This document shows, in pieces, positions 1 through 61,367 of a DNA stretch of 64,000 nucleotides; the first letter of the stretch is position 1; every line of letters begins with the position of its first letter. The translations under genes were made by a program, and so were the position numbers. Below the pieces are notes generated by a model. The model had not been told where the DNA came from and did no database searches. It saw only the letters and a program-made list of their open reading frames with translations. The stretch lies in NCBI RefSeq assembly GCF_963921235.1, contig NC_086128.1, positions 4,464,001-4,528,000 of the forward strand, given 5' to 3'. This DNA is from Mobula hypostoma (taxonomy: Eukaryota).

Positions 1-344
1 GACACGACAAACATTCGCCGACAGAGCAGTCTGCGAAAGTCGAACAAAGACAGTCATCACCAGCCGGTTGGGCCCGGTGCTCTCCGCACTGTCCGCACTG
101 CGGTGTGGAGAGCGGCTGTTGGCCCAGAGCGGGAGTGGTGATCAATGTGCAGTCGTTTCCAAAGGGGTTCTCTCCGTCACAGTAAAAGCGGTTGCGGCCG
201 AACTTACGCGGTCGCTGTCACCACAACCCTGATAGTACACTGTAGCTGATATCGGCAGACACAAGGCATCTCCCCCACCGCCCCCTGCTCTGCAACCGTT
301 CACCTAGACTGTACTCCCGCGGAGAGCTGGATTTTGACTCCGAT

Positions 345-484
345 CAGGAATTTTCACTGTTACTGTTTCCGGAATCTCCCGTTTTCGCATTCAGAGCGGA
401 AATGAGGAAACGATCACTGACAGTTTTCCTTTCAGAACACCTGACGCCCATTTTCAGTTTTCGAATGTAATAGCACACATAAAA
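345..484 (+). promoter_or_regulatory. Gene A promoter: CATAAAA box, IRF and NF-kB-like sites
   Basis: CATAAAA 478-484. On the opposite strand: TTACATTCGAAAACTGAAAA (451-470), GAAAGGAAAACTG (421-433), and the kB-consensus GGGAGATTCC (371-380) adjoining GCGAAAAC. Confidence 0.7.
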
Positions 485-668
485 TTCGGCAGTATGGCAG
501 AGAGAGCTCACAACACGATCCCCAGATACAGGACTCGGCAGCACCGGCGTCCGCTCCCGGATCACAAGCCGCGGCGTTTCTATATCCCGAGTTCCAGTCG
601 GCGAACAAGACCGGTTTTCGGAGCTGATTCTAGTCTCATATCGGTGCTTTATTCTGTGTCGGGTGAAG

Positions 669-3092
669 ATGGCATTGGGCCGTGTTTGGAGAGTTTGCAG
701 TGTGTGGCTGTTTTTGACCGGGACCCTGACCCTGGGCAGTGAGAAGTTACAGTTACTGCAAATTCTGAACACAAAGACTCTGGGCAAACTGGATGAAATG
801 GTGAGTTGAACCTGCGCCCAGAAACCGCTCCTGACAGTCCCTGGCTCTTTGATTTAAATCTCAGAAAAGGCGCTATAGTTTGAGAGCTTTGTCGTTCTAC
901 ATGCCTGATTCCCCGCGTTACTGTGATATTTCGGTGTTGGATTGTCTATAACAAAGTTTACTTTCTCCCTCCCAGGGCGCTGCCTTTCCCTGGCAGTGTG
1001 TAAGTGAGAGGCTGTCGCTAAAAACCCAGCCCTTGAAGCTAGTGAATCTTTCGAAGGGGTTGACGGTGAGTGGTTGGACTTTATTTCATTCAGTTGCAGA
1101 GCGCATTATTTTGGTACTTCATCATCTATCATTGTGACTTCGTGTTGCCGAAACGTGGATGTGAAAAGGAGTGTAGTATGTACTCCTTTCTCGGATGTCA
1201 GTGACTGAGAAAACAACTTCCCACCGACACTGGCTCGTCTAGCGGAACCTTTAAGACCAGAAAACCATAAAATATAGGAGCAGAATTTGGCCATTCGACC
1301 CATCGAATCTGCTCCACCATTTCATCCTGGCCGATCCATTTTTCCTCTCAGCCCCAATCTCCTGCCTTCTCCCTGTATCCCTTCATGCCCTAACCAATCG
1401 AACTCTGCCTTAAATATACATGAAGATTTGGCCTCCACAACTGCTTGTGGCAAAGAACTCCACAGACTCACCACTCAATGGCTAAAGAAATTCCTCCTCA
1501 TCTCGTTCTAAAAGGAGACCGCTCTATTCTGAATCTGTGTCCTCGAGTTTAGTTTTAGATAGTCTCCCAAATAGGAAATGTCCTCTCCATCAAGACGTTT
1601 CACACGATTCAATTAAGTCACTGCTCATTCTTCTAAATTCAAACTTTTTTCATGTGACAAGCTGTTTAATCCTGGAATCATCTTCGTCAACCTCCTTTGA
1701 ACCCTTTCCAGTTTCATCACTCCCTGTCTAAGAAAAGGTGTCCAAATGAGGTCTAAAGAGCAGGCAGTAGATGATGTTCAGAATTTCAAAAGTGCATGAT
1801 GAAATAACTGTTCGATAAGGTGAAGAAAACGATATTGGATTAAAATATCAGCAAGGAACGAGGACTGGCTAAAAGACAGAGAACATAGAACTAAAAAAAA
1901 TGAACATCCATGTCGTCAGGCTATTAATAATAAGGGGTTCCGTATTGTGAACAGAGTAGCTGACCCATGTTAAAAAGGTCATTAACGAATTAGATGGAAA
2001 TAAGAAGTGCAATATACTGTATGTCCAAGTTTGTTGCTGATAATAAGGCGCAAAGGGTAAGGGCAGCGTGAGGACGGGTAGGTTGGAGAATTATGTGGGA
2101 AACTGTGATTGTGCAGTTTGCTGTGAATCTGCGTTTTTAGAGTATAAATTGAATAGTTCAAAATTGGAAAGTGTCGAAGTACAGAGTGTTCATAGTGTGC
2201 ATAATGATTCTATCTGACCGCAGTAAATGATGTCAATGAAAACGTGAGTGGTCTGATTAGTATGTTTGCATATAACGCAATTATTGGTAGTGGAGTTATG
2301 GATAGTGAGGAAAGCTGTCAAAGAATGCAACAAGATGTAAATCAATTGGAAATTTGGGCAGAAATATGGCATGTAAAGTTTAATCCAGTTAACCATGATG
2401 TGGTACACGAGGAAAGATGGACCTTAGGGGCATTCATGTACAAAGCGATCTTAGGGTGCAAATCCACAGCTCACTGAAAGTGTTGACATAAGTGGTAAAG
2501 AAGCTTTCCTGCTATGACTATAGGAAGGACGCAAAGACTTAAGGGAGGATTTGGAGAAGTTCACTGAGATGTCTGGATTGGAGAATGCTGCTGAACCAGA
2601 TTGCTAGCAAGACTGCTGTAATGACACCTTGTGTTCTTTGCACAGACCCAAGAGAAGATCCATATTGTTTGTCAAACACTGCGGCAAACCAACGAGATCT
2701 ACGGCATGAGTTTAGGTTCAGCCACATGGCCCCTCAAAAAGGTGGAAGGCTTCAGGGTTCTCCTGCATCGGCAAGTCAGAGTGCTGGAGGAATGCGTGTG
2801 GAATCCAGCCACAGAGTCTCGGCCAAAGGGAACCATCATAATTGAAAAATACTTTCGAAAATTGCGAAGCTTTCTTAAACATAAGGTGAGCTGGTAGCTG
2901 TTATACTCTGTCATTAATTAGCGATATTGCATTTCACCCAGTTTCTGTATGCGCAACCCATAATTTGCTCTCCTGAATATTTTCTTTTTCCAGAAGTTTG
3001 CCGAATGTGCCTGGGAAATTATCCGTACTGAAACGAGAGCCTGTTTACAGCAGATCCTCCTCATCGCAGCAAAAACTAGCAGAAAATACTGA
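669..3092 (+). CDS. Type I interferon gene A (divergent member), 4 exons, 186 aa
   Basis: Exons 669-800 (MALGRVWRVCSVWLFLTGTLTLGSEKLQLLQILNTKTLGKLDEM), 976-1065 (GAAFPWQCVSERLSLKTQPLKLVNLSKGLT), 2646-2885 (TQEKIHIVCQ...KYFRKLRSFLKHK), 2994-3092 (KFAECAWEIIRTETRACLQQILLIAAKTSRKY*). All introns GT-AG, phase 0. Hydrophobic signal peptide; KYF..L..FL and CAWE..R motifs of type I IFN. Confidence 0.93.
1255..2600. mobile_element. Decayed CR1 LINE fragments in intron 2 of gene A
   Basis: Minus-strand CR1 3' end (~1255-1750) and plus-strand RT remnants (SMFAYNAIIG...QLEIWAEIWHVKFNP, resembling SKFADD...WQMQFN). Confidence 0.65.
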
Positions 3093-7770: not shown

Positions 7771-9658
7771 TGAAAGCAGACAAGTCCAGCTTTCCCCACC
7801 ATCAATGACATCTACATAAGCGATGTCTCAGGAAAGCAATATCCATCATTAAGGACCCTCATGATCCAGGATATGCCCTTGCTTTGATGCTGCAAGCAGT
7901 TAGGGGAGCCTGAAGACTCACATTTCGAACTTCGATATTAAATTCTCCCTCACTTAAATTATGTTCTTGAACTGAATATCTTAACTCAACATTGGATTAT
8001 ATTTCTTCTTTCTCTCTCAACTTTCACTCTTTGATGTTTAATTTGTAATATAATTAAATCAATTTAAGTTAATTTAATTTATGTTTATCAGATTTCTAAT
8101 GTACTGAGCTGCTGCTAAAATGTTCGTAGCATTTATACCCTGGGTACTAATGCCTCAAACGATAATACACATCATAATTCATTAGTCTCTGTTTTATTAT
8201 TTCATACATTATTATTAGTTAAGTCTGCACACTGTTAAGTGTGTTTTTAAATATTGCTGCTGTAATGAAAGAATTTCCCACTCGGGATCAATAAAGTATT
8301 TATTATTATTATTATTATAAACTTGAATTTAAATTTGTGATGCTGGAATCTGAAACCACTTTAGTTCTCAATCCTAATTCCATTCTGACAAAATTGCAGC
8401 CTCCTCCACTGCCACAGTGAGCTCAATATAAGCAGGAAAAACAACAGGTTATCCTCCCTCAGGGTACTACTGCATACGGTTTCTGCTGTGAAGCCAGTGT
8501 TGTATCTTCATTTCAGGCTCAAAGGTTTCTCATTCAACAGGAGAATATGAAGAAGGAAACTATTAGTTTAAATCCATGTATCATCCAGAAAACAGAAAAT
8601 TAAGACAATTAATTTCAAGATGTATGTGTATGCTTCGTCTGCTGAGGGGGAGGTATAGAATGGAGGGGAAAGCCTATGACAGGGAAAGTGAAGGCAAAAT
8701 CTTATATTCCTGAGAAAATCAGCAAACACAAAAGTTATTATTAAAACATTGTGTAATATGGAGAATAAATAATACAGATACATCTTTAATGAAATGTTTT
8801 ACTTAGAAAAATATTATCCATTAGATATCTCTCAATAACAATAAATTAAAGGCTTTTTTAGCCACACATACACATGTTTTAAACATATCACAATAAATAT
8901 AAATAAAGGCAAATTTAGCTTCTGACCACTGGAAGAACAAGCACATTATGATTACTGTGGTCAGGGATGAAGTCATAAGGAATGGCTCTGCAAATCCATA
9001 TCTTTTATATGAAATTGAGGAAAATGATTTGTTACCCAGCTCCATTTACAATTGGAACTAAAATAACATCCACAAAACAGAGACAAGCTGCCAAAGACAG
9101 TGAGAATGAAAAGCTGGCGACAGAGCACCTTCTCCAGAAATGCAACTTTGCATTGCACTAGTTTCCAGTCTTTTAAGTGAGGGACGGAGACAGGAACAAT
9201 CACCAAATTCACATTTCATCACATAGTAGCAATACAAAAATAAATACCAATAAATTAAGTTAACACTAAAAAATAAAGTTCCAGGCACTCTCTGTTCTCC
9301 ATTATTTGTCAACTGAAAATCTCTGCAATGTAACATAATGCATCATAAAGACAGAAAATACTGAAAATGTTCCATTGTTTAGACAACAGTGAGGCAGATG
9401 GGACGAGGAGAAATATAGTTAATGCCTCAGCCTGATAATCATTCATAATGTTGGAAGTCTTTTTTGGGCCCAAGTTTTCCTCTCAACATGTATGAAGTAT
9501 TTCCACCCGATGAGGTTTTCATTCAAATTTTCAGCAATTGCTTTTGTTTTGAAATGTAATATGAATCAATTTACATATTCTTTTTGATCAATGAAGGTTA
9601 TTGTTAAATAAATAGTCACCAATTTTAGTCCCTTATAAAAATTGTCTCTGGTAATTCT

Positions 9659-12600
9659 TCAGTGACCTCTGCTGATTTTTGCCATAATGAGAAGGTGCTG
9701 TTGTAGATGTGCTCTGGTCTCAGCGCGGGTTATTTCCCAGGCACAGGCAGTGAATCTCTGAAAGAGAGAAAATGAAATACGTTATATAATAAACCAATAT
9801 CAAGTGTTTGAAATAATGTGCTGGTGATCAAGTGTTAATTCACCTTCTGTTTCAGAAACTCTCTCAGTACATGAAAGTATTTAAGAATTGCGGCATTCTT
9901 CCTTGGTTTGGACTCTGAGCCTGGTTTCCGGACACAATCTTCCAGCTCTTTGAGCTGCCGATCCAAGAGAAGCCTGAAGTGTTCCACTGAGCTCTGGACC
10001 CACGTGACTGAGCTCAGGTTCAAACTGTAGATCCTGCGGAGGTGATGCAGGGTCTGATGGACAATCCAGATCCTTTCCTGTGCCTGTGCAAAACACACGT
10101 GGTGATATTAGTAGGGCCATGGTTCTAGTAAAGTTGAGATTTAGAACAGAATGCTTATAACTCTCAGTAGAATAGGACAAGACAAAATCAGTCATTAACT
10201 TCAAACAAACAGACCTTAACTAAGGGACTGCTAACTTCAGTGAATTTATCAAAGTGCAGAGCCATGTCAACTGCAGCCTACAGTTAATAGTTTAAACAGC
10301 GAAAGGAGAATTTCCTATTAGTAAGGCCTCAGGTGCAGGAGAGACTGCTCGAGTCCTTGACAGGTTGCAAAACTGATTTGCACGAATACATTAATGCTGC
10401 AGGGACTTTCAGTTACAGAGTGAGTCCAGAGAAATTTGGGCTGATCTCCTCAAGACACAGACAGTGAGGGAGAGATTTTCGAGACATGTCCAATCTCATG
10501 AAGAGATTGAAATTCTTAGAGGAATGAAAAACAGGTGAAGGAAGAACAGGAAAGGAGGAAATAAGAAGGGGAGTTTAGCTATATGACAAAAGGTTTGCCA
10601 TGTCAAGAGCCTGATGTACACTGACCATTGCATATTTTTAAAAGAAGTAGAGTGCATCAGCTATTACAACCTTCAGACTTTGGGTGGAGACAAATGAAAG
10701 TGTTACAGAAGCAGTTCCTTTAGCTTCCCCCAACCTCCAATTTTTCTGAACCTCCTTTGAACCCTCTCCAGTTCCAGCACATCCTTTCTCAGAAAAGGGG
10801 CCCAAAACTGCTCACAATATTCCGAATGAGGCCTTACCAGTGCTTTATAATGTTTCAGCATTACATCCTTGCTTTTATATTCAAGTCCACTTGAAATGAA
10901 TGCTGACATTATATTTGCCTGAGCCCGCAAATTAAACTTTAGGGAATCCTGCACAAGGACTCCCAAGTCTCTTTACTTCTCAGTTTTTTGTATTTTCTCC
11001 CCATTTAGCAAAGAGTCAACCCTTTCATTTCTTCTACCAAAGTGCATGAACTACACTTTCTGACACTGTATTCCATCTGCCATTTCTTTGCCCACTCTCC
11101 TAATCTGTCAAAGTCCCTCTGCAGCCTCCCTATTTCCTCAAAACTTCCTGCCCCTCCACCTTCATATTGCCTGCAAACTTTGCAATAAGGCCATCAATTC
11201 CATCATCTAAATTATTGATATATAATGTAAAAAGAATCGGTCCCAACACAGACCCCTGTGGAACACCACTAGTCACCGGCAGCCAACCAGAAAAGGCTCC
11301 CTTTATTCCCAGTCTTTGCCTCCTGCCAATCAGTCACTGTGTTATCCATGCCAGAATCTTTCCTGCTATACCATGGGCCCACAGCTTGTTAAGCCAGCCT
11401 CATGTGTGGCACCTTGTTAAAGGCCTTTTGAAAATCCAAGTACACCACATCAACCAATTCACCTTTGTCCATCCTGCTTTTTAATTCAAAAAATTATAAC
11501 AGGTTTATCAGGCAAGATTTTCCCTTGAGAAAATCATGCTGATTATAGCAAGTACCCTGAGACCTCATCTTTTATAATCAACTCCAACATCCTCCCAGGC
11601 ACTGAGGTCAGACTAACTGACCTGTAGTTTCCTTTCTTCTGCCTCTCACCCTTCTTGAAGAGTGGAGTGGCATTTGCAATTTTCTAGTTTTCCAGAACCA
11701 TTTGAGAATCTAGTGATTCTTGAAAGATCATTATAATGCCTCCATTATCTCTTCAGCCACCTCTTTCAGAACTCTGGGGTGTATACCATCTGGCCCAGGT
11801 GACGTATCTACCTTTAGACCTTTCAGTTTCCCAAGAACCTTCTCTCTAGTTATGGTAACTTCACACAATTAATGCCTCCAGCTACCTGCAACTTCCACCA
11901 TACTGCTGCTGTTTTCCTTAGTAAAGACTGATGCAAAATACTTATTCAGTTCATCTGCCATTTCCTTGTTCCCCATTACTATCCCTCCAGCATCGTTTTC
12001 CAGTGGTCCGATATCTCTCCTGTCTGTCTTTTACACTTTATATATCTGAAGAAACTTTTGATATCCTCTTTAATATTATTGGCCAGCTTACTTTTTTATT
12101 CCATCGTTACCTTCTTAATGACTTTATAGTTCCCTTCTGTTAGTTTTTTAAAGGTTCCCAATCCCCTAACTTCCCACCAATCTTTACTCAATTATATGCC
12201 CTCTCTTTGGCTTTTATGTTGGCTTTGAGTTCACTTCTTTTGCCACAGTTGTGTCATCTTTCCTTTAGAATACTACTTCCTTTTTGAGATGTATATATCC
12301 TCGGCCTTCCAAATTGCTTCCAGAAATTCCAACCATTGCTGCTCTGCTGTCATCCCTGCCAGTGTTCTTTTCCAATCAATTTTGGCCAACTCCTCCCTCA
12401 TGCCTCTGTAATTCCCTATACTCCACTGTAATGCCGATATCAGAGGTGTAAAGGGACGAGGGAGTCTTTGTGCAGCATTCCCTAAAGGTTAGCTTGCAGG
12501 TTGAGTCGTGGTGAGGAAGGCAAATGCAATGTTAGTATTCATTTCGAGAGGACTAGAATATCAAACAAAGATGTAATGCTGAGGCTTTATAAGGTGCTGG

Positions 12601-14480
12601 TGAAGCCTCACTTGGAATATTATAAGCAGTTTTGGGCCCCTTATTTAAGAAAGGATGTGCTGACATTGGAGAGGGTTCAAAGGATGTTCATGAAAATGAC
12701 CCCGGAAATGAAAAGGTTAATATATGAGGTGTATTTGATGGCTCTGGGCCTGTACTTGCTGGGATTTAAAAAGATGGGTGGGTGGGGAGTCTCATTGAAA
12801 CCTACTGAACATTGAAAGATCTGGATAGTGAATTTTATCATATTATGATCACTTTCCCTGATAGGCTCTCTTACCTTGAGCTCTCTAATCAATTCTGGTT
12901 CTTTGCAAAACACCCTATCCAGAATAACTGATACTCTAGTCTGCCCAACCACGAGCTGCTCTGAAAAACCATCTCGTAGGCACTCTAGAAATCCTACCTC
13001 CTGTAACCTGACACCAACCTGATTTTCCCAAACTACCTGTATATTGAAGTCCCCCCAAGACTGCTGTAACATTGCCCTTTTGGCTTTCATTTTCTATCTT
13101 CCATTGTAACTTGGAGGCAACATCCTAACTACTGTTTGGGCATCTGTACAGAAGTTCCATCAGGGACTTTTTACCCTTGCAGTTCCACACTCTATCCACA
13201 GTGGTTCAACACCTTCTGACCCTAGGCCACCTCTTTCTAATGAGTATTTTCTGAGTATGCCATCAAGTAAACAAATCTCAGGGTTGTATATCGTGAAATA
13301 TATCAATTTTGATAATAAATTCACTTGAACTTTGAACAGATATCGTGAGAGTTTCTGTCTTAAGATGTTTGTTCCAAATTCCATCCATGCATTGTGGATT
13401 TTTTTCCTGCTATCGCATCCTGTACTCCAAAGTTTTGCATTAAATCTGTAACATTGGTCATATACATTTCTTCGATTTGGAAAGTTTATAGATGCCTACA
13501 ATCATAGAACCACGCATGATATGGCACACCAGTGTCAGGTCTCCCCTCAGCTTTTATCTCCTCGATACCAAAGGGTCAGCTATAATGTAAAATAATTTAA
13601 CGAGAAACCTCACGATTTTTCAGTGCATTTAAAGTGAAGTAGGTGGTTCCATCACCAATGAAGCACGTAGGTAGTGTGATGATCTGAGAGGATGCAAGCA
13701 TTTCCTGAGATCAACAGAACTCGTAATGTCACTGTAGGGTGCGGGAGAGATATTTAGAGAGAGGAACACAGAGAGAGGGAGAGGAAAAACTAGCAGAAAG
13801 TGATACAGGGTGACATGTTTATTGGTGACAGAGCATGTGAAATGATTAGATTAGATGATGGGAGGGAGTTATATACAGAGAGGGAGCTAACCGTGAGTGG
13901 GATAGAGAGAAAGGGGGCAGCAGTGTGATAACTGAAATGAGATCTATTCCGTGTGAATGGGGTCCTGAAAGTCCGAGTGATAGAGTCAGAAAATGAGTGT
14001 GACATGGAGAGAAAGAATTCATATTCTGATATAGTCAAATTATCTGGGTAAAGTTCGGATCCGATCCTTCACATTACTTAGCATAATATCTCCAATGAAT
14101 TACATTAAAGTAAAATCCAGAGTTTACTCACATGAACCTGCTCCGAAAGTTTCACCAGGTCCAGAGGCTTGGTTTTCAACGACAGCCTCTCAGTCGCACA
14201 CTGTCGGGGGAGGCGGCCACCCTGAGACAGAAGATACCAACGTTACTGATAATCCCACCACACAGAAACACCGGGAGAACAGACTATTTGTTAACAACGA
14301 ACAGCCAGGGACTGTCAGGACCCGTCTCTGGGAGTGGGTTCAACTCACCATTTCATTCAGTTTGCCCAGAGTCTCTGTGTTGAGAACTTGCAGTAACCGC
14401 AGCCTCTCACAGCCCAGGGTCAGGGTCACGGTCAAAAACAGCCACACACTGCAAACTCTCCAAACTCGGCCCAATGCCAT
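9659..14480 (-). CDS. Type I interferon gene B, 4 exons, 186 aa
   Basis: Exons 14349-14480 (MALGRVWRVCSVWLFLTVTLTLGCERLRLLQVLNTETLGKLNEM), 14132-14221 (GGRLPRQCATERLSLKTKPLDLVKLSEQVH), 9844-10083 (AQERIW...KYFHVLREFLKQK), 9659-9757 (RFTACAWEITRAETRAHLQQHLLIMAKISRGH*). GT-AG phase-0 introns; 4 mature cysteines; NLS glycosylation sequon. Confidence 0.94.
10745..13245. mobile_element. Decayed CR1 fragments in intron 2 of gene B (mirrored at ~57781-60281 in G)
   Basis: RT and endonuclease peptides (YKALVRPHSEYCEQFWAP; GDFNIQVVW...FLECLRDGF) on both strands, frameshifted. Confidence 0.85.
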
Positions 14481-14664
14481 CTTCACCCGACACAGAATAA
14501 AGCACCGATATGAGACTAGAATCAGCTCCGAAAACCGGTCTTGTTCGCCGACTGGAACTCAGGATATAGAAACGCCGCGGCTTGTGATCCGGGAGCGGAC
14601 GCCGGTGCTGCCGAGTCCTGTGTCTGGGGATCGTGCTCTGAGCTCTCTCTGCCATACTGCCGGA

Positions 14665-14811
14665 TTTTATATGTTAAAATCCGAAAATGGGTGACATTCG
14701 AAAAGTGAAATGAGTGCGGGATATTTGGGAACGCGTCGGGAGAGAGCGACCTCCGCTCCGAAGGAAGGAATCTGAAAGCGGGAGAGTCCCGCAGCAACGA
14801 CGGGAAAATCC
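14665..14811 (-). promoter_or_regulatory. Gene B promoter: TATA box, ATF/AP-1-like, IRF and two NF-kB-like sites
   Basis: TATAAAA (rc 14665-14671). On the + strand: TGACAT 14692-14697, GAAAAGTGAAA 14700-14710, GAATCTGAAAG 14768-14778, GGGAGAGTCCC 14780-14790, GGGAAAATCC 14802-14811. Confidence 0.8.
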
Positions 14812-15665
14812 GCCACCGGAGAGAACAAGCAGTGTCCAGGCTCCGGACTTCATGCGTTCGTTCAGTTCGGGGGTCCAAGGGGTTGTGGAAGGAGGGTCAG
14901 CTTTAGCAGGGGACGAGGGTAGGTTTGCGAACGTGACTGTGTCCGCACAACTGTGGGGCTACAAATCCGGGTTACAGCAATACCGCACCTTTCAGCGCTG
15001 ATCTTCGAATCCACACAGAGAGATTTTGTTAAACACAAACAAAAAAGCTTGAGGAACTCAGCAGATGAAGCAGCATCTATTGAAATAAATGAACAGTCGA
15101 CATTTCGGGTCGAGACCCGTTCAGCATCAGTAGAATCTCTTGTGTTTAGATTCTGTTAAGACACCAAGCTTCATTAAAACCACGTCGCATGGTGGTCAGT
15201 GCAGAAAGGCTAGGTCACAGCCGAAAACTTCTATAGTTTTGATTAAAAACAATGATATTTTTGTTGACTGTATTCTTTACAGAAGATATTTCTGTTTATC
15301 TTTTAAATTCAATCGTTTGGACACCGAGGCCAGAGGCGATCCCGAGCCTGATCTCTTTTCTTACTTGCCGCTACTCCCGGGAACGTCTTCGGGTCCGTTC
15401 GCAACTTTCGGGACAAGAAAGGGTTTCGTTACTTCCACAATTAGACGTGTTTGTAAATGAGCAAGTAAAACTACAAATCATAAACACCAAAAATTCTGCA
15501 GATGCTGGAACTCCAAATCAATACACACAAAATACTGGAGGAATTCAGCAGGTTATGCAGCATTTATAAAGAGTTGATGTTTCGGGCCGAGGCCCTTCAT
15601 CAGGTCTGAATGAGTCCATGAGTGCTAACGAAGGTTCTCGGCCTGAAACATCGACTGTTTATTCC

Positions 15666-17824: not shown

Positions 17825-18247
17825 TCACGGATCTCTGCTGATTTTTGCCATAATGAGAAGGTGCTGTTGTAGATGTGCTCTGGTCTCAGCGTGGGTTATT
17901 TCCCAGGCACAGGCAGTGAATCTCTGAAAGAGAGAAAATGAAATACGTTATATAATAAACCAATATCAATTGTTTGAAATAATGTGCTGGTGATCACGTT
18001 AATTCACCTTCTGTTTCAGAAACTCCCTCAGTACATGAGAGTATTTAAGAATTGCGGCATTCTTCCTTGGTTTGGACTCTGAGCCTGGTTTCCGGACACA
18101 GACATCCAGCTCTTTGAGCTGCCGATCCAAGAGAAGCCTGAAGTGTTCCACTGAGCTCTGGACCCACGTGACTGAGCTCAGGTTCAAACTGTAGATCCTG
18201 CGGAGGTGATACAGGGTCTGATGGACAATCCAGATCCTTTCCTGCGC
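17825..18247 (-). pseudogene. Type I interferon copy C: exons 3-4 only (exons 1-2 not found)
   Basis: Exon 3 18008-18247 and exon 4 17825-17923 (RFTACAWEITHAETRAHLQQHLLIMAKISRDP*) are open with intact splice sites. Its promoter/5'UTR survives at ~25856-26170 but abuts CR1 sequence; I could not find the exon 1 CDS or exon 2 between 18250 and 25856. Confidence 0.8.
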
Positions 18248-18786
18248 CTGTGCAAAACACACATGGTGATATTAGATAGGTTCTGATGCTAATAAGCTTT
18301 AGAACTAAATTAGAATGCTATGTAGCTGAATAGAATAGCGTATTAAACATCCGTATCAAGCAATCAGCACCCAGAAGAAAGACTGCTAACTTCTGTGATC
18401 TGAAAGAAGTTTAGAGCTATGTGATCTGCAATTGGTACTCAAGCTATGAACAGGGTGTGAACAAATAGCCGTGAGTAAGGCATCAGGTGAAGGACAGAAT
18501 GACAGGACTCGACAGAATGTGGGACCTATTATGAAGAGTAGCATCAATGCTGCAGGACATCAGTTACATGGAGAGATTCGGGGAACGAGGGCTGTTCTGC
18601 TTTAGCTAGGGGTGGCGAGGGGGAGATTTTATAGACATATGTCATCTCATGAAGGGGAAATCAAGCAGGTAGGTGGAAAAAAATGTCTGATCTGAACGGA
18701 ATGTTTAAAAGAATCAGCGGTAACTTACAAAGAGAGCAGCATAAACAATTATTTATCAACTATGTTGGCACAAGGAAATAGAGTTT

Positions 18787-25300: not shown

Positions 25301-25845
25301 ATTTTCCGGTCCCATATCTAAGAAAGGATGCGCTGGTGTAGGGGTGCGTTCAGAGAAGGCTTGCGAGGATGATCCGGGAACGAAAGGACTAACGTATGAG
25401 GGGTGTTTGATGGCTCTGGGTCTGTACTCGCTGGAGTTTAGGAAAAAGCGGGAGTATTTTAATTGAAACCTCCTCAATATTGAAAGGCCTAGGTAGAGTG
25501 GATGTGGACAGAATATATCCTATCGTAGGGGTGTCTAGGGAACTGAAGGCACACCTACAGAATAGAAGGACGTCCCTTTAGAGCAGGGTTTATGTAGAAT
25601 TTCTTAAGCCAGTAGGTGTAAATCTTTGAGATTCATTCCCATAGACTTCTATAGAGGCCAAATGATGGGTTATATTTAAAGTGTATGTTGATAGATGCTT
25701 AATTAGCAAGGGCGTCAAAGTTAGTGGGCAGAAGACATGAGAATGTGCTTGAGAGGGAAAATCAAATATCAGCCATGATCGGATGGCGGACTAAACTCGA
25801 TAGCCGATCGGCTTAATTCTGCTCCTATATCTTTAAGTATGATGT
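22385..25845 (+). mobile_element. Older decayed CR1 host element(s), including another CR1 3' end at ~22640-22932
   Basis: FKKGGRQKTGNYRPNSLTSVVGKML remnant; RT continues after 24832; (TTCTATG)n tail at ~22915-22932. Confidence 0.75.
22989..24827 (+). mobile_element. Young 5'-truncated CR1 LINE nested in an older CR1
   Basis: 527-aa RT ORF 23154-24737 (SKFTDD); (CTATTGT)n tail; probable TGGTT duplication at 22984-22988 and 24828-24832 interrupting an older CR1 RT. Confidence 0.92.
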
Positions 25846-25855
25846 ACTAAAGGAC

Positions 25856-26148
25856 CTGAGACCAGAATCAACTCCGAAAACGGGTCCTGATTGTCGTCTG
25901 GTACTCAGGACAAGGAAATGCCGCGGCTTGTGATCCGGGAGCGGACGCCGGTGCTGCCGAGACCTGTGGCTGGGGATCGTGTTGTGAGCTCCCTCTGCCA
26001 TGCTGCCGGATTTTATATGTTAAAATCCGAAAATTGGTGACATTCGGAAAGTTAAACGACCACGGGATATTTGGGAGCGTTTCGGGAGAGAACTCTGAAG
26101 TAAGGAATCTGAAAGCGGGAGAGTCCCGCAGCAGCGACGGGAAAATCC
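25856..26148 (-). promoter_or_regulatory. Orphan promoter and partial 5'UTR of copy C
   Basis: TATA 26011-26017 and both kB-like sites retained; the proximal IRF site is altered (GGAAAGTTAAAC). 5'UTR homology ends at ~25856 against a CR1 3' end. Confidence 0.75.
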
Positions 26149-28088
26149 GCCACCGGAGAGAGCAATCAACACTCCGTCTCCGGTTCAGAACGGGGGTCCA
26201 AGGGATCGTGGATGGAGAGTCAAGTTTTGGCAGGAGAAAAGGTGGGTGGGGGGGGGAAGTAACTGTGTCCATTCACTGGTGGGGGAAGGATTTTTATCTG
26301 CGTTGCGCCTTGCAGCGCCGACCTTCGCATGCGCAGATCGATGTTGTTGAATCCGCCCTTCGCGCTCACCTGAGCTGAAGCCGCAACACAGGGTGGTCAG
26401 TGCCTGAATCACAGCGGCCCGTGGCGACTCTCTTTCTGCGGATACTCATCCCCTTGTTTTTCTTTGCATTTAAACCGCTTCGACTCCGAGTCGGAAAGCA
26501 ATCCCGACCCCGAACTAGATCCCTTTCCTTTCTTACCATTGCTCCGAGAATGAAACCAGCTCCGTTTTCCTCTGGAAAGCGGCCACGTGGCAACTTCACC
26601 CGAAGAGAGAGTGAACGGGGCAAGTGACGCATTCGTCACTCCCGAAAGTAGCCGTGATGGCAAATTAGCAAATAAAACTGCAGATACTGGAGTCTTAAAC
26701 AGCTAAAATTCTCAACTCCATTCCCGGTCGTGCTAACGACCACCACCACTGCCATAGTGAGGTCTAATGTCAACTAGAATAGCACCTTGTCTTCCCTCTC
26801 GGTACTATTGCAAGTGGCTTCTGCTTTTAAATTGTCAAGTCTCACTGCATCCGGCCTGCAGTTTCAACACTTCCTTATTCAATTGGAGAATGTGAGGATG
26901 AAATAAAGATTAAATCCATGCATATTCCATGGAATTAAAAAATGAGGAAATTCATTTCAAAAGGCATGCATATACTCTGTCTACCGAGAGTGGCATTGTA
27001 AAAAGGAAGGCCAAGAAACTTCAAATGTTATATTCCTTGAGGAAGATCATACATATAGTATACCTCCAGCATTGTATAATATTGAAAATACTTAACATCC
27101 ACATCTTTACAAAAAGTTTTTAATTTAGAAAAAATATTTGCATTGCTTATCTCGGAATAGCAATAAATTAACAAAGTTAATGAGCCACAATTGCACATTA
27201 AAATCCAAAATAAATATAAATAAATTAATATAAAATTATCTTAAGACTACCCTGTACTGAGATAACAAGTACATGTTGATTACTGTCCGTTCGGGATAAA
27301 TTCAAGATCAATGGTCCTAGAAGTCCATCACCCACCAGAGCGTCATGCAGGCTTAGAAATTAATGATCGTACACCTATTGCAAGAGCAACAAATGCAGGG
27401 AGAATTTGCAGAAAATCGAATGGCAATAAACAGTTTAGCCTCGGATAGGAGGAGCGCCCTACAACTCGCTAACTGAAATTGCTAACACTAAAGGAAGCTG
27501 GGCAAAAATCGCATCATGTCTTCGACATGACATTGTGGAAAATGAATGATTATCCATCTCACTTTAGTGTTGTAGCTAACATAATGCCAACGATAAGAGA
27601 CGGTGAGAGTGAGGAGCTAAGCACCACCCATCTTCTCCAGTAATTACATTTTACACTGAAGGATCTGCCTGTCTTTAAAACGGGAACGGATTCAGGATCA
27701 TTCACCAAATTGACATCTCAATCCAGGATAGTCATACAAAGATCAATATCAATAAATTAAGTCAACACTGGTATATGAATAAAGATCTAGGCATCTTCTG
27801 TTCTCCCTTACTTGCCAAGTGAAAATCGCAGCAATGTAACAACACAATATATTGTAAAGTCAGAAAAAACTGAAAATGTTCTGCTGTTGATGGGGATTCA
27901 TGATGTAACTTTTTTGCTGACCGAAATTATTAACCCAGTTTTCTTCTCCACGCGTAATATTTCCGTCAACTTCTGTTTACGCTCAAATTTCCGGCATTCG
28001 TCTTTTTTTTCTTTTTCCATAAATAAAGCGCACTTTAAGTTAATAGCCATTAATCTCAGTCGCCTATGTGGTTGTCTCTGCAGAATCT

Positions 28089-31047: not shown

Positions 31048-31194
31048 TTTTATATGTTAAAATCCGAAAATGGGTGACATTCGAAAAGTGAAATGAGTGC
31101 GGGATATTTGGGAACGCGTCGGGAGAGAGCGACCTCCGCTCTGAAGTAAGGAATCTGAAAGCGGGAGAGTCCCGCAGCAACGACGGGAAAATCC
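31048..31194 (-). promoter_or_regulatory. Gene D promoter (same module as B)
   Basis: Same motifs at constant offset +16383 from gene B. Confidence 0.8.
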
Positions 31195-33035: not shown

Positions 33036-34980
33036 CCGTTTGTTCGAGATGGAATTCGAGCCACATTCGGAAGGTGGTTGTGCTTTCATGCAGACCCTGA
33101 TTCCAGCGTGTGAGTTAAAGACAACTTCAAGATGAGCTCCAACTTCTGTGCACATTTGGAAAGGGTTAACTGCAATGGGGCCTTTTTATTTTTTTTTCTT
33201 TTCTTTTTTTCCTACTAACTGCTCGAATAAGCTGAAATTTGTAAATATACTTTCTTTATAATTATATGCAGTGTCCCATCTGTTGTTTCTTGCCGACGGT
33301 AAATTGCATAGGAGCAGTATTTACACAATATTCGCACAGATCGGGGTTCGGATGGTTGACATATCTCGCAACTTCCCAATTTTGCTGGGACCCAAGTCAT
33401 ATTGACCCTAGACATATGGCGTTTGAGAAAGGTGGTTTTCTCGCCGCTGCGTCCAGAGGCTGTTCACGAGGGGCTAACAAGCCGCGTCTCTACAGACGCC
33501 CGGTAAAAAACAGTTTCGTATGGCTATGGCAAGTTATCCGACATGTTAATGCCTACGAAATTTCACTGTTGACCCCCCAATGTACAGTGGTATAGGTTTG
33601 CCCTCCTCAACCTTCCTGGTCAATAATCAGCTCTTTATTTTTGCTGACGTTGAGCGAGTGGTTGATCTTGAGACACCACTCAAACGGGCGATGAACTTTC
33701 TCCAGTAGATTGACTCATCACTACCTGTTATTCATCCAGCAACAGAGATGTTGGCCATGCATTTGAAGTTAGTATTGAAGCTATGCTTAGCCACACAATG
33801 AATGTGTATAGACAATTGAGCAGAGGCTAAGCACGCAGCCTCCGACTGTAACTTCGTTGATGATCGGCGAAGAGAGATACTGTTGCTAATCCTCACTGAT
33901 TGAAGTTTACAATGAAGAAGGGGAGTATCTAATTACAGAGGAAGGTACAGATGAGGAAGGCCCATGTCCTCAAGTCTGATGATGAGTTTCGATGGGACGA
34001 TATAGATGATATTTAACCCCATCATTCCTACCGGGGAATAGGCCACCGACCATTCACGTCGTCTCCAGGTGTAGCCCATTTTTTCCTTCCTCTCCCACAG
34101 ATGGGGTCTTTAGAGATCCTGTTGGCGTTTCTGTAGCACTGTGTTTTTGAAGGATAGGGTTGCCACCTCATGCCCCAAACCCATCCTTTTGCAGTTGGGC
34201 TTGGCACCGCCCATGCCATGGCGGGTTTTCGATGGGATGATTGCGTTGAAATCCGAGTTTTAATTGATAAACCGCAGCCGGAGGTATGTGTCATGTTGTC
34301 CCGATGGTCCACAGTAGAGTGAACAGCCAGAGAAATCACACCTGATGTAGACCCGTTGAGGCATTAAATAAACTGGGGCGGGTCTGGGTCATTTCTGAGG
34401 CTGGGTAAGGGAAAGTAGGAAATTCTGGGGTTTTATTGTTCCCATATATCTCCTTTCAACACACTCCCTCTTAAAAAGCATGCCAACTGGTAGTGCAGAT
34501 TTCGACCCTGGAAGAAAGATACCAGCTGTCTCAGTTATTTATGCCTCTCAATATCTTACAAACGTCTATCTCGTTTCCCCTCATCCTCCGCCGTGTCGGA
34601 GATAACAATGCAAGTTTGTCCAACCTCACGTTTCAGCAAGTGTCCTCCAATAAAGGCAATATCCCGCTAAACCTTTACTTCACGCCGTACTGTAAGCATA
34701 ACAGTTCCACACCATATCAAGACGGTTTTTGTCCTCATCTGTTGTCCAGGCACACATCAATGGTCTTTTCTGCTTCTTTCAAACTGCCTAATTGACCCCT
34801 GTGTTGTCTGACGTTTCTGTGGCCTGGGGGAGTCAGTGGTCTTTGTATAATTCGAATGTAAAAAATTGTAACCCCGGCCCCGCCACCGCATGAGTATTTC
34901 AAAAGCCTCAAGTTCTGGTGCACTTCAGACCTATGCTCCCAATCCATGGGCACTCTTTGCAGAGGTTATTCGGGTCAAGT

Positions 34981-45109: not shown

Positions 45110-45256
45110 TTTTATATGTTAAAATCCGAAAATGGGTGACATTCGAAAAGTGAAATGACTGCGGAATATTTGGGAATGCGTCGGGAGAGAGCGACCTTCG
45201 CTCTGAAGTAAGGAATCTGAAAGCGGGAGAGTCCCGCAGCAACGACGGGAAAATCC
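45110..45256 (-). promoter_or_regulatory. Gene E promoter (same module as B)
   Basis: Same motifs at constant offset +30445 from gene B. Confidence 0.8.
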
Positions 45257-46908: not shown

Positions 46909-47055
46909 GGATTTTCCCGTCGTTGCTGCGGGACTCTCCCGCTTTCAGATTCCTTACTTCAGAGCGAAGGTCGCTCTCTCCCGACGCATTCCCAAATATC
47001 CCGCAGTCATTTCACTTTTCGAATGTCACCCATTTTCGGATTTTAACATATAAAA
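46909..47055 (+). promoter_or_regulatory. Gene F promoter (divergent partner of E)
   Basis: GGATTTTCCC, GGGACTCTCCC, TTTCACTTTTC, ATGTCA and TATAAAA; mirror image of the E promoter (coordinate sum 92165). Confidence 0.8.
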
Positions 47056-56160: not shown

Positions 56161-59100
56161 CTGAACGAACGCATGAAGTCCGGAGCCTGGACACTGCTTG
56201 TTCTCTCCGGTGGCGGATTTTCCCGTCGTTGCTGCGGGACTCTCCCGCTTTCAGATTCCTTCCTTCGGAGCGGAGGTCGCTCTCTCCCGACGCGTTCCCA
56301 AATATCCCGCACTCATTTCACTTTTCGAATGTCACCCATTTTCGGATTTTAACATATAAAATCCGGCAGTATGGCAGAGAGAGCTCAGAGCACGATCCCC
56401 AGACACAGGACTCGGCAGCACCGGCGTCCGCTCCCGGATCACAAGCCGCGGCGTTTCTATATCCTGAGTTCCAGTCGGCGAACAAGACCGGTTTTCGGAG
56501 CTGATTCTAGTCTCATATCGGTGCTTTATTCTGTGTCGGGTGAAGATGGCATTGGGCCGAGTTTGGAGAGTTTGCAGTGTGTGGCTGTTTTTGACCGTGA
56601 CCCTGACCCTGGGCTGTGAGAGGCTGCGGTTACTGCAAGTTCTCAACACAGAGACTCTGGGCAAACTGAATGAAATGGTGAGTTGAACCCACTCCCAGAG
56701 ACGGGTCCTGACAGTCCCTGGCTGTTCGTTGTTAACAAATAGTCTGTTCTCCCGGTGTTTCTGTGTGGTGGGATTATCAGTAACGTTGGTATCTTCTGTC
56801 TCAGGGTGGCCGCCTCCCCCGACAGTGTGCGACTGAGAGGCTGTCGTTGAAAACCAAGCCTCTGGACCTGGTGAAACTTTCGGAGCAGGTTCATGTGAGT
56901 AAACTCTGGATTTTACTTTAATGTAATTCATTGGAGATATTATGCTAAGTAATGTGAAGGATCGGATCCGAACTTTACCCAGATAATTTGACTATATCAG
57001 AATATGAATTCTTTCTCTCCATGTCACACTCATTTTCTGACTCTATCACTCGGACTTTCAGGACCCCATTCACACGGAATAGATCTCATTTCAGTTATCA
57101 CACTGCTGCCCCCTTTCTCTCTATCCCACTCACGGTTAGCTCCCTCTCTGTATATAACTCCCTCCCATCATCTAATCTAATCATTTCACATGCTCTGTCA
57201 CCAATAAACATGTCACCCTGTATCACTTTCTGCTAGTTTTTCCTCTCCCTCTCTCTGTGTTCCTCTCTCTAAATATCTCTCCCGCACCCTACAGTGACAT
57301 TACGAGTTCTGTTGATCTCAGGAAATGCTTGCATCCTCTCAGATCATCACACTACCTACGTGCTTCATTGGTGATGGAACCACCTACTTCACTTTAAATG
57401 CACTGAAAAATCGTGAGGTTTCTCGTTAAATTATTTTACATTATAGCTGACCCTTTGGTATCGAGGAGATAAAAGCTGAGGGGAGACCTGACACTGGTGT
57501 GCCATATCATGCGTGGTTCTATGATTGTAGGCATCTATAAACTTTCCAAATCGAAGAAATGTATATGACCAATGTTACAGATTTAATGCAAAACTTTGGA
57601 GTACAGGATGCGATAGCAGGAAAAAAATCCACAATGCATGGATGGAATTTGGAACAAACATCTTAAGACAGAAACTCTCACGATATCTGTTCAAAGTTCA
57701 AGTGAATTTATTATCAAAATTGATATATTTCACGATATACAACCCTGAGATTTGTTTACTTGATGGCATACTCAGAAAATACTCATTAGAAAGAGGTGGC
57801 CTAGGGTCAGAAGGTGTTGAACCACTGTGGATAGAGTGTGGAACTGCAAGGGTAAAAAGTCCCTGATGGAACTTCTGTACAGATGCCCAAACAGTAGTTA
57901 GGATGTTGCCTCCAAGTTACAATGGAAGATAGAAAATGAAAGCCAAAAGGGCAATGTTACAGCAGTCTTGGGGGGACTTCAATATACAGGTAGTTTGGGA
58001 AAATCAGGTTGGTGTCAGGTTACAGGAGGTAGGATTTCTAGAGTGCCTACGAGATGGTTTTTCAGAGCAGCTCGTGGTTGGGCAGACTAGAGTATCAGTT
58101 ATTCTGGATAGGGTGTTTTGCAAAGAACCAGAATTGATTAGAGAGCTCAAGGTAAGAGAGCCTATCAGGGAAAGTGATCATAATATGATAAAATTCACTA
58201 TCCAGATCTTTCAATGTTCAGTAGGTTTCAATGAGACTCCCCACCCACCCATCTTTTTAAATCCCAGCAAGTACAGGCCCAGAGCCATCAAATACACCTC
58301 ATATATTAACCTTTTCATTTCCGGGGTCATTTTCATGAACATCCTTTGAACCCTCTCCAATGTCAGCACATCCTTTCTTAAATAAGGGGCCCAAAACTGC
58401 TTATAATATTCCAAGTGAGGCTTCACCAGCACCTTATAAAGCCTCAGCATTACATCTTTGTTTGATATTCTAGTCCTCTCGAAATGAATACTAACATTGC
58501 ATTTGCCTTCCTCACCACGACTCAACCTGCAAGCTAACCTTTAGGGAATGCTGCACAAAGACTCCCTCGTCCCTTTACACCTCTGATATCGGCATTACAG
58601 TGGAGTATAGGGAATTACAGAGGCATGAGGGAGGAGTTGGCCAAAATTGATTGGAAAAGAACACTGGCAGGGATGACAGCAGAGCAGCAATGGTTGGAAT
58701 TTCTGGAAGCAATTTGGAAGGCCGAGGATATATACATCTCAAAAAGGAAGTAGTATTCTAAAGGAAAGATGACACAACTGTGGCAAAAGAAGTGAACTCA
58801 AAGCCAACATAAAAGCCAAAGAGAGGGCATATAATTGAGTAAAGATTGGTGGGAAGTTAGGGGATTGGGAACCTTTAAAAAACTAACAGAAGGGAACTAT
58901 AAAGTCATTAAGAAGGTAACGATGGAATAAAAAAGTAAGCTGGCCAATAATATTAAAGAGGATATCAAAAGTTTCTTCAGATATATAAAGTGTAAAAGAC
59001 AGACAGGAGAGATATCGGACCACTGGAAAACGATGCTGGAGGGATAGTAATGGGGAACAAGGAAATGGCAGATGAACTGAATAAGTATTTTGCATCAGTC

Positions 59101-61329: not shown

Positions 61330-61367
61330 TCCTTCTCATTATGGCAAAGATAAACTCAGGACTCTGA
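56546..61367 (+). CDS. Type I interferon gene G, 4 exons, 186 aa (near-identical to B except C-terminus)
   Basis: Exons 56546-56677, 56805-56894, 60943-61182, 61269-61367 (RFTACAWEITRAETRAHLQQLLLIMAKINSGL*). ATTTA-rich 3' flank and AATAAA at 61528-61533. Confidence 0.94.

What the first reader, a model, noticed from the sequence alone, without database searches (positions are those of the whole stretch)
14665..14811. Inverted, split IFN-beta-enhanceosome-like module in the promoters
Known: the human IFNB enhancer reads TGACATAGGAAAACTGAAAG-GGAGAAGTGAAAGTGGGAAATTCC (PRDIV ATF-2/c-Jun, PRDIII/I IRF, PRDII NF-kB). Seen here on the strand opposite the gene: TGACATTCGAAAAGTGAAAT (14692-14711), ~55 bp spacer, GGAATCTGAAAGCGGGAGAGTCCC (14767-14790), then a second kB-like GGGAAAATCC. 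Both composite junctions (ATF/IRF and IRF/kB) keep the human spacing and order, but the module is flipped so the PRDIV-like site is nearest the TATA box. Divergent gene A keeps both composites (TTACATTCGAAAACTGAAAA; GCGAAAACGGGAGATTCC) although its surrounding promoter has drifted. Inference: the two half-enhanceosomes may be ancestral to jawed vertebrates, and every gene here would be an IFN-beta-like primary responder.
Basis: partly seen in the sequence, partly recalled or inferred. Interest (0 to 1): 0.8.

Follow-up and report, generated by a model that had tools for sequence, protein, structure and literature searches.

The report
Ray interferon promoter: IRF and NF-kB sites
This stretch is the switch region in front of a ray antiviral interferon gene; its IRF and NF-kB binding motifs are real and are kept in a skate, but the claimed ATF-2/c-Jun part is not kept and nothing shows that the human interferon-beta enhancer descends from this layout.

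Summary
Every quoted motif sits at the stated coordinates, upstream of a TATA box and exon 1 of a 4-exon type I interferon gene (Pfam Interferon, E=3.9e-12). The module recurs at six near-identical gene copies, and a diverged form sits at gene A.

The copies inside the window are recent duplicates and say little. The useful test is an 81-kb interferon cluster from another batoid assembly (L006), whose promoters align with these.
- The NF-kB site GGGACTCTCC is 10/10 identical in four skate promoters.
- The abutting IRF half-site is 11/12, the proximal IRF element 10-11/11, and the second kB-like site 7-9/10.
- Spacing is fixed: kB to IRF element 81 vs 82 nt, IRF element to TATA 35-36 nt.
- The spacer (58-67%) and upstream flank (63%) have drifted.
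- The PRDIV-like TGACATTC is TGATGTTT in the skate (5/8, background level).

Two shark loci share only the antisense IRF element next to TATA, flanked by a different bZIP-like 8-mer. A ray-finned fish has other junction spacings.

Verdict: this is an IRF plus NF-kB inducible interferon promoter with a PRDI/PRDII-like composite kept across batoids. The "ancestral half-enhanceosomes" reading is not supported. Gene A carries a second, old promoter class. The transcription start and inducibility were not tested.

The parts
14665..14671 (-). TATA box (TATAAAA on the gene strand). The transcription start is predicted near 14640 and has not been mapped.
   Evidence: Sequence; present in all type-1 copies. 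The skate has TATTAAA at the same distance, IRF element to TATA 35-36 nt.
14692..14699 (+). PRDIV-like 8-mer TGACATTC (bZIP half-site TGAC), one base from the IRF element.
   Evidence: It is only 5/8 identical in the skate (TGATGTTT), the same level as the spacer. Sharks have TTGCATCA or TTACATCA at the same offset.
14701..14711 (+). Proximal IRF element AAAAGTGAAAT (PRDI-like hexamer repeats), antisense to the gene and 39 nt upstream of TATA.
   Evidence: It is 10-11/11 identical in four skate promoters. The same 10-mer sits in the same orientation and position in shark loci L001 and L002.
14712..14766 (.). 55-nt spacer. Its sequence has drifted but its length is kept.
   Evidence: 58-67% identity to the skate with no indels; the kB to IRF element distance is 81 vs 82 nt.
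14767..14790 (+). IRF half-site (TGAAAG) abutting an NF-kB site (GGGAGAGTCCC; consensus GGGACTCTCC on the gene strand, 14781-14790). This is a PRDI/PRDII-like composite.
   Evidence: The kB site is 10/10 and the IRF half 11/12 in four skate promoters. The skate reads GTGAAAGTGGGA, a 12-nt exact match to human PRDI/PRDII.
14791..14811 (+). Conserved linker (14791-14801) and a second kB-like site GGGAAAATCC (14802-14811), 21 bp from the first.
   Evidence: The linker is 10/11 and the site 7-9/10 in the skate. The G/A boundary of the site shifts (GGGGAAATCC, GGGGGAATCC) while its length is kept.
14349..14480 (-). Exon 1 coding part (signal peptide and helix A) of the interferon gene served by this promoter. 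The other exons lie at 14141-14221, 9841-10086 and 9668-9754.
   Evidence: The homologous exon 3 of the 31-kb copy hits Pfam PF00143 (47.1 bits, E=3.9e-12). The atlas gives Interferon clusters.
31075..31194 (+). Same module at the 31-kb gene copy (gene on the minus strand).
45137..45256 (+). Same module at the 45-kb gene copy (gene on the minus strand), head to head with the 47-kb copy.
46909..47028 (-). Same module at the 47-kb gene copy (gene on the plus strand).
56215..56334 (-). Same module at the 56-kb gene copy. It lies inside a 5.2-kb inverted repeat that is 100% identical to 9658-14871.
26038..26148 (+). Decayed module of a truncated copy. The IRF element is mutated (GGAAAGTTAAAC), the spacer has a 9-nt deletion, and no exon 1 or 2 is detectable downstream.
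347..485 (-). Gene A 'type 2' promoter (gene on the plus strand), written 5'->3' on the minus strand. It holds AGTGAAAATTCC (347-358), GCGAAAACGGGAGATTCC (371-388), the extra IRF-like site CTGAAAGGAAAACTG (421-435), TTACATTCGAAAACTGAAAA (451-470) and the variant TATA (CATAAAAT on the gene strand, 478-485).
   Evidence: It is orthologous to skate promoters at L006:30025 and L006:66917 (67-69% identity, against 51-58% to type 1).

Best explanation
14665-14811 is the virus-response promoter of a ray type I interferon gene. It has two constrained blocks.

1. An antisense PRDI-like IRF element lies 39 nt upstream of the TATA box.
2. After a 55-nt spacer comes a 45-nt block. It holds a consensus NF-kB site abutting an IRF half-site, and a second kB-like site two helical turns away.

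Most likely mechanism: after virus sensing, IRF3/IRF7 (and IRF1) occupy the GAAA elements and NF-kB occupies the kB sites, and together they recruit the transcription machinery to the nearby TATA box.

What is shown: the motifs, their positions, their copy structure, and their conservation with fixed spacing in a skate. What is inferred: which factors bind, inducibility, and the transcription start.

The PRDIV-like TGACAT is a lineage-specific sequence, at best a fluid bZIP half-site, and not a conserved ATF-2/c-Jun site. The likeness to human IFNB reflects the same factor grammar. It was either reached independently or held by binding geometry, and inheritance of the enhanceosome is not shown.
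For: Gene identity:
- Pfam Interferon hit, atlas hits, and 32 interferon relatives.
- The exon model agrees with P0007.

Motifs and copies. Motif density exceeds the genomic background.

Ray vs skate (L006) promoter alignment:
- kB 10/10, IRF half 11/12, IRF element 10-11/11, linker 10/11, distal kB-like 7-9/10.
- Spacer 58-67%, upstream flank 63%.
- Fisher p=5.7e-5 and 2.2e-3 for motif against non-motif positions.
- Distances kB to IRF element 81/82 nt, IRF element to TATA 36/35-36 nt, TATA to ATG 193/190 nt.
- PRDIV-like 8-mer 5/8.

Sharks:
- L001 and L002 have TTTCACTTTT in the same orientation and position.
- L001 has a kB-like site plus an antisense TTTC 83 nt upstream of it.

A ray-finned fish (L003) also has a kB site followed by an antisense IRF element 34 nt upstream of TATATAA.

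Related species laid on the stretch show their best-supported differences at 14656, 14689, 14759, 14764, 14833 and 14835, all outside the motif blocks.
Against: - No RNA evidence was obtained. No listed run is on record as RNA, and the contigs laid do not mark a start. The transcription start rests on the TATA box alone.
- There are no binding or induction data.
- Three of four skate type-1 copies weaken the distal half of the IRF element (TTTC to ATTC).
- The type-2 promoters do not keep the kB site: GGGAGATTCC in ray gene A, a 2-mismatch GGGCACCTCC on the gene strand in the skate.
- The distal kB-like site never matches the consensus perfectly.
- Generic local alignment of ray against shark promoters is not significant beyond the 10-mer.
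- hides 131 differences, so conservation in the nearer relatives is only suggestive.
Confidence: 0.72

Rival explanations
1. [quoted passage not shown] Here they are flipped and split, and they make all the genes IFN-beta-like primary responders.
For: - 16/20 identity to human PRDIV-PRDIII with TGACAT at the exact offset.
- The skate composite contains GTGAAAGTGGGA, 12 nt identical to human PRDI/PRDII.
- All chondrichthyan promoters with the IRF element carry T-N-N-C/T-A/G-T at -9..-4.
Against: - TGACAT is not kept in the skate, the skate type-2 promoters or the sharks: TGATGT, TTCCAT, TTGCAT, TTACAT.
- The IRF/kB gap is 2 nt only in batoids. It is 4 nt in L001, 7-9 nt in L003, and there is no composite in L002 or L004.
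- The 55-nt spacer is unconstrained in sequence.
- Tetrapod intronless IFN genes are held to come from retro(trans)position, which leaves the promoter behind.
- Two promoter classes and a relic copy exist here.
Confidence: 0.08
2. A real but fluid IRF-bZIP composite. A bZIP factor (ATF, C/EBP or PAR/NFIL3 type) binds next to the proximal IRF element in cartilaginous fish, with half-site turnover between lineages (GTCA, ATCA, GTAA, GCAA on the gene strand).
For: - Five of six chondrichthyan promoter lineages have a canonical bZIP half-site at +6..+9 after the IRF element.
- In two shark loci the only significant promoter similarity is the 24-nt island TTTTCACTTTT[A/G]TGATG[C/T]AAACAG, which holds a C/EBP-ATF-type 8-mer (score 38 against a shuffled maximum of 24).
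Against: - Ray to skate identity in the 8-mer is at background level (5/8), with three substitutions.
- Skate type 2 has GGAA there, which is not a bZIP half-site.
- The pattern was defined after looking. Its chance probability is about 1/32 per lineage, and the lineages are related.
- The shark 8-mer also resembles an octamer (ATGCAAA).
Confidence: 0.2
3. Chance motif resemblance carried along by recent gene duplication, with no regulatory role.
For: - Six copies are near-identical duplicates.
- 16/23 identity to PRDI/PRDII is common by chance.
Against: - Block-wise conservation with fixed spacing in a distant batoid.
- Position right upstream of the TATA box of an interferon gene.
- Motif islands kept in the otherwise diverged gene A promoter.
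- Joint motif density occurs in 0.18% of background windows.
Confidence: 0.04

Closest known systems
Human/mouse IFNB1 enhanceosome (PRDIV-PRDIII-PRDI-PRDII, -102 to -51)
   Same: - The same factor grammar: PRDI-like hexamer repeats (AAGTGAAA).
- An NF-kB site two bases from the last GAAA core. The skate version shares GTGAAAGTGGGA with human.
- In this ray, TGACAT at the PRDIV offset.
   Different: - All GAAA cores are antisense to the gene.
- The kB block is distal (about -127 to -171 from the predicted start) instead of proximal.
- The halves are split by a 55-nt spacer that drifts in sequence.
- Only 2+1 IRF cores are present instead of four in tandem.
- A second kB-like site is present.
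- The PRDIV-like site is not conserved.
- The gene has introns, and the tetrapod lineage is thought to be a retrocopy.
Teleost type I IFN promoters (Atlantic salmon IFNa1, zebrafish IFNphi1/phi3)
   Same: Promoters of intron-containing IFN genes controlled by IRF3/IRF7/IRF1 (PMC5127012). From my own memory of Bergan et al. 2006 (cited there, not read here), the salmon promoters have a TATA-proximal region with IRF motifs and an NF-kB motif. The one ray-finned fish locus read here (L003) has kB followed by an antisense IRF element 34 nt from TATA.
   Different: - Junction spacings differ (7-9 nt in L003).
- No second distal regulatory region or alternative start was examined here.
- No paper on a cartilaginous-fish IFN promoter was found in the library. 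Redmond et al. 2019 does not contain the word 'promoter'.
Mammalian IFNA virus-response elements (IRF-only promoters)
   Same: The gene A / skate type-2 class is IRF-rich: four IRF-like sites in gene A and a perfect GAAACGGAAA in the skate.
   Different: Ray gene A still has a perfect kB site. Whether the two classes respond differently is unknown.

Membership tests
IFN-beta enhanceosome | Contiguous, gap-free array of PRDIV, PRDIII, PRDI and PRDII over about 55 bp | tested here: not met
   The two composites are separated by 55 nt that is only 58-67% conserved between ray and skate.
IFN-beta enhanceosome | ATF-2/c-Jun site (TGACATAG type) abutting the first IRF site and conserved | tested here: not met
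   TGACATTC is present in ray type-1 copies at the human offset. The skate has TGATGTTT (5/8), skate type 2 has TTCCAT, and the sharks have TTGCATCA or TTACATCA.
IFN-beta enhanceosome | Four tandem IRF half-sites with 6-bp periodicity | tested here: not met
   Two cores lie in the proximal element, one in the distal composite, and one GAAAAT lies next to TATA. They are not contiguous.
IFN-beta enhanceosome | NF-kB site directly abutting the last IRF half-site (GAAA-NN-GGGRN...) | tested here: met
   The ray has GAAAGCGGGAGAGTCCC, the skate GAAAGTGGGAGAGTCCC and human GAAAGTGGGAAATTCC. The register is ambiguous by 1 bp because the site is an 11-bp pseudo-palindrome.
IFN-beta enhanceosome | Sense orientation with the kB site nearest the TATA box | tested here: not met
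   All GAAA cores are on the strand opposite the gene, and the kB block is the distal one.
IFN-beta enhanceosome | Cooperative binding of ATF-2/c-Jun, IRF3/7, p50/RelA (and HMGA1) | not testable with these tools
   Needs gel shifts, ChIP or reporters.
IFN-beta enhanceosome | Common descent with the mammalian element | tested here: inconclusive
   The junction is not shared by the shark and ray-finned fish loci sampled. The retro(trans)position origin of tetrapod intronless IFN genes argues against it. Sampling is thin.
Virus-inducible type I IFN promoter (TATA + IRF element + NF-kB site) | Lies directly upstream of a type I IFN gene with a TATA box | tested here: met
Virus-inducible type I IFN promoter (TATA + IRF element + NF-kB site) | IRF element and kB site present and under purifying selection | tested here: met
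   (Fisher p=5.7e-5).
Virus-inducible type I IFN promoter (TATA + IRF element + NF-kB site) | Induced by virus or poly(I:C); transcription start about 30 nt from TATA | not testable with these tools
   No RNA run holds the stretch. The single read-laying run showed DNA-like contigs only.

The most novel reading that the evidence does not exclude
The IRF/NF-kB junction (GTGAAAG-N-GGGA) is a structural unit that vertebrate interferon genes either kept from a common ancestor or rebuilt independently, to the same base-pair register, in batoids and mammals. In addition, batoid IFN clusters have maintained two distinct promoter classes for two IFN subtypes since before the ray-skate split: kB-anchored 'type 1' and IRF-rich 'type 2'. 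The transcribed regions are homogenised by gene conversion up to a boundary at the TATA box. This would be an early parallel to the mammalian IFN-beta/IFN-alpha regulatory division.
Probability: 0.2. Interest if true: 0.6.

Novelty: new member of a known kind. Interest (0 to 1): 0.38.

Why it matters
How interferon genes were wired to IRF and NF-kB at the origin of jawed vertebrates is known only from mammals, birds and a few teleosts. I found no paper on a cartilaginous-fish IFN promoter in the searched library.

This work gives a concrete, testable map for batoids:
- two constrained blocks with fixed spacing
- an IRF/kB junction in the same register as the human one
- a PRDIV-like site that is not constrained

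It also shows that the tempting "ancestral enhanceosome" story fails its own test, conservation in other sharks and rays, for the ATF part. It is further weakened by the retrocopy origin of tetrapod IFN genes. If the two promoter classes respond differently, that would bear on when the early/late (beta/alpha-like) division of interferon induction arose.

Tried and rejected
- **RNA evidence for the start site.** Two run searches found no holder on record as RNA. The single read-laying run gave DNA-like contigs only: promoter and intron were covered and there were no splice joints. The start site stays untested.
- **Spurious-ORF search.** I searched the 118-aa ORF that spans the promoter, hoping to pull out related contigs. 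It found nothing.
- **Fetching orthologous loci.** Three chondrichthyan genes (P0007, P0010, P0014) returned no DNA because the assemblies are too large. Three proteins were not on record. All 12 look-ups are used.
- **Whole-string identity to human PRDI/PRDII as evidence.** Rejected: 16/23 is expected 2.4 times per 64 kb, and an 18/23 match lies at 34404.
- **Agreement among the six copies as evidence.** Rejected: they are recent duplicates, two of them inside a 100% identical 5.2-kb repeat.
- **Generic local alignment of ray promoters to shark and bony-fish promoters.** Not significant. Only the L001-L002 island stands out. The MAFFT alignment of those loci is unreliable and was not used.
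- **L004 (another chondrichthyan IFN) and L005 (an intronless IFN pair).** Neither shows the composites. L004 has a sense-oriented GAAAGTGAAAGG instead.
- **Distal site as an NFAT/TonEBP site.** The fit to TGGAAANNYNY is poor, so I did not pursue it.

Full report
**1. What is there**

The quoted strings are all at the stated coordinates:
- TGACATTCGAAAAGTGAAAT at 14692-14711
- a 55-nt spacer
- GGAATCTGAAAGCGGGAGAGTCCC at 14767-14790
- GGGAAAATCC at 14802-14811

They lie upstream of TATAAAA (minus strand, 14665-14671). An ATG at 14480 opens an exon that ends in a GTGAGT donor.

The gene is a type I interferon.
- The large exon of the 31-kb copy hits Pfam Interferon at 47.1 bits, E=3.9e-12, and interferon clusters in the atlas.
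- A search of 1.8 billion proteins returned 32 interferon relatives.
- One of them (P0007) matches my four-exon model exon by exon in six copies of the window.

The window holds seven promoter copies.
- Five near-identical 'type 1' copies sit at 14, 31, 45, 47 and 56 kb.
- A truncated relic sits at 26 kb.
- Gene A sits at 0.4 kb.
- The 14-kb and 56-kb genes lie in a 5.2-kb inverted repeat that is 100% identical.

I did not check that.

**2. Is it more than chance?**

The human enhancer as quoted is correct (PMC4743414).
- The ray 20-mer is 16/20 identical to PRDIV-PRDIII. Such a match is expected 0.15 times per random 64 kb, so it is unusual, mainly because it lies next to a TATA box.
- The second composite is 16/23 identical to PRDI-PRDII. 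That is expected 2.4 times per 64 kb, and an 18/23 match exists at 34404, so identity alone proves nothing.
- By motif content, 0.18% of background 147-nt windows have at least two IRF-like and two kB-like sites.
The site is an 11-bp pseudo-palindrome.

Agreement among the copies in the window is uninformative because they are recent duplicates.

**3. The decisive comparison**

Public chondrichthyan genomes were mostly too large to fetch. One mis-joined gene model (P0001) brought in 81.6 kb of an interferon cluster from assembly GCA_028641065.1 (L006). From memory this is the little skate, which I did not verify. It has six exon-1 copies. Their promoters align with the ray's over the whole length.

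| Block, ray type 1 vs four skate type-1 promoters | Identity |
|---|---|
| kB site | 10/10 in all four |
| IRF half-site | 11/12 |
| Linker | 10/11 |
| Distal kB-like site | 7-9/10 |
| Proximal IRF element | 10-11/11 |
| Spacer | 32-37/55 |
| Upstream flank | 43-44/69 |
| PRDIV-like 8-mer (TGACATTC vs TGATGTTT) | 5/8 |

- Motif positions against non-motif positions give 41/43 vs 92/140, Fisher p=5.7e-5. The most diverged copy gives p=2.2e-3.
- Distances are kept: kB to IRF element 81 vs 82 nt, IRF element to TATA 36 vs 35-36 nt, TATA to ATG 193 vs 190 nt.

So the IRF element and the kB/IRF block are constrained, spacing included. The ATF-2/c-Jun-like site evolves like the spacer.

The skate composite reads GTGAAAGTGGGA, which is identical over 12 nt to human PRDI/PRDII.

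**4. Further out**

- Two shark-like loci, L001 (GCA_035084215.1) and L002 (GCF_021869965.1), encode distant interferon subtypes. Both carry TTTCACTTTT in the same antisense orientation about 30-40 nt upstream of a TATA-like box.
- Next to it they have TGATGCAA or TGATGTAA. These are C/EBP-ATF or PAR-type 8-mers, and they read TTGCAT or TTACAT at the offset where the ray has TGACAT.
- This 24-nt island is the only significant similarity between the two shark promoters (score 38 against a shuffled maximum of 24). Some factor site beside the IRF element is therefore probably real in sharks.
- Across lineages the half-site class changes (GTCA, ATCA, GTAA, GCAA on the gene strand), and skate type 2 has none.
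- L001 also has a one-mismatch kB site followed by an antisense TTTC, with a 4-nt gap, 83 nt upstream of the IRF element.
- A ray-finned fish locus (L003) has sense IRF sites, a kB site, and then an antisense IRF element 34 nt from TATATAA, with 7-9-nt gaps.
- L004 and an intronless pair (L005) show no such composites.

The mirror-image layout, kB then antisense IRF then TATA, seems common to fish-type interferon genes. The exact 2-nt junction is seen only in batoids.

**5. Relation to the human enhanceosome**

- Three of the defining features fail: contiguity, four tandem IRF cores, and orientation and position. A fourth, a conserved ATF site, fails on conservation: TGACATTC sits at the human offset in ray type-1 copies, but the skate has TGATGTTT (5/8).
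- One is met: the kB site abuts an IRF core.
- Tetrapod intronless type I interferon genes are held to have arisen by retro(trans)position (PMC5127012, PMC6640115), and a retrocopy does not bring its promoter.
- Intron loss by other routes is also discussed in that literature, so descent is not excluded. Nothing here supports it.

I therefore read the likeness as the same factor grammar, and possibly the same binding geometry at the IRF/kB junction, reached without demonstrable inheritance.

**6. Two promoter classes**

Upstream of the TATA box the promoters group by type across species.

| Comparison | Identity upstream of TATA |
|---|---|
| Ray type 1 vs skate type 1 | 74-79% |
| Ray gene A vs skate sk30025 / sk66917 | 67-69% |
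| Type 1 vs type 2 | 51-58% |

Downstream of the TATA box they group by species.

| Comparison | Identity, TATA to first 100 nt of 5'UTR |
|---|---|
| Ray type 1 vs ray gene A | 93% |
| Skate type 1 vs skate type 2 | 84-86% |
| Across species | 75-81% |

The transcribed 5' end is therefore homogenised within each genome, with a boundary at the TATA box, while two promoter classes persist. Gene A and its skate counterparts also encode the more divergent protein.

Type 2 is IRF-rich, and its kB site is not kept in the skate. This, together with the relic at 26 kb, contradicts 'every gene here is beta-like'.

**7. Limits**

- The start site, inducibility and factor binding are untested.
- No RNA run holds the stretch, and the read-laying run showed only DNA-like contigs.
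- In those contigs from related species, the best-supported differences (14656, 14689, 14759, 14764, 14833, 14835) fall outside the motif blocks. However, 131 differences were not listed.
- Species names for the fetched assemblies are from memory or from unchecked notes.
- I found no paper on a cartilaginous-fish interferon promoter. This covers only the held library.

**8. Verdict**

- This is a new member of a known kind, an IRF plus NF-kB interferon promoter, with a well-footprinted architecture in batoids.
- It is not an inherited, inverted enhanceosome.

Noticed in passing
window 9658-14871 and 56155-61368: A 5,214-nt inverted repeat is 100% identical and covers a whole interferon gene with its promoter. 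It is either a very recent duplication or conversion, or an assembly artefact.
   Followed up: no
window 200-700 vs 14470-14880; L006 promoters: There are two promoter classes older than the ray-skate split. Gene A groups with skate sk30025 and sk66917. The TATA-to-5'UTR part groups by species instead, which points to gene conversion with a boundary at the TATA box.
   Followed up: partly
window 25786-26306 and 17834-18250: The 26-kb copy keeps the promoter and 5'UTR, but no exon 1 or 2 is detectable. Its IRF element is mutated and its spacer has a 9-nt deletion. Only the last two exons are found, 8 kb away. It is a relic.
   Followed up: partly
window genes; L001, L002, L004, L006 vs L003: All chondrichthyan IFN genes read here have four coding exons, with helices B-D in one 77-88-aa exon. 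The ray-finned fish gene L003 has five. Reviews state four introns for fish and cartilaginous-fish genes.
   Followed up: partly
L001:11838-11861 and L002:2273-2296: A 24-nt island, TTTTCACTTTT[A/G]TGATG[C/T]AAACAG, is the only significant similarity between two shark IFN promoters of different subtypes. It joins an IRF element to a C/EBP-ATF or PAR-like 8-mer.
   Followed up: partly
window 15036-15100: A very high-copy repeat begins about 225 nt upstream of the module. Contig depth there is 2,400 to 195,000 in four runs of related species, against 5-250 over the promoter.
   Followed up: no
window 14653-14655 (minus strand ATG): ATGGCAGAG lies between the TATA box and the predicted start. It is kept in seven of the eight aligned ray and skate promoters (one skate type-2 copy reads ATGACAGG) and opens an 82-codon frame that overlaps the real ATG. 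It would matter only if transcription starts further upstream than predicted.
   Followed up: no
L006:3001-78646; window 46525-46701; L001:3001-3126: Public gene models of these clusters are mis-joined. P0001 spans 75 kb and fuses two genes. P0002 takes a first exon from between two promoters. P0015 takes one from 9 kb upstream.
   Followed up: no
window 34404-34426: GGTAAGGGAAAGTAGGAAATTCT is 18/23 identical to human PRDI/PRDII but far from any interferon gene. It is an example of how easily such likeness arises.
   Followed up: no
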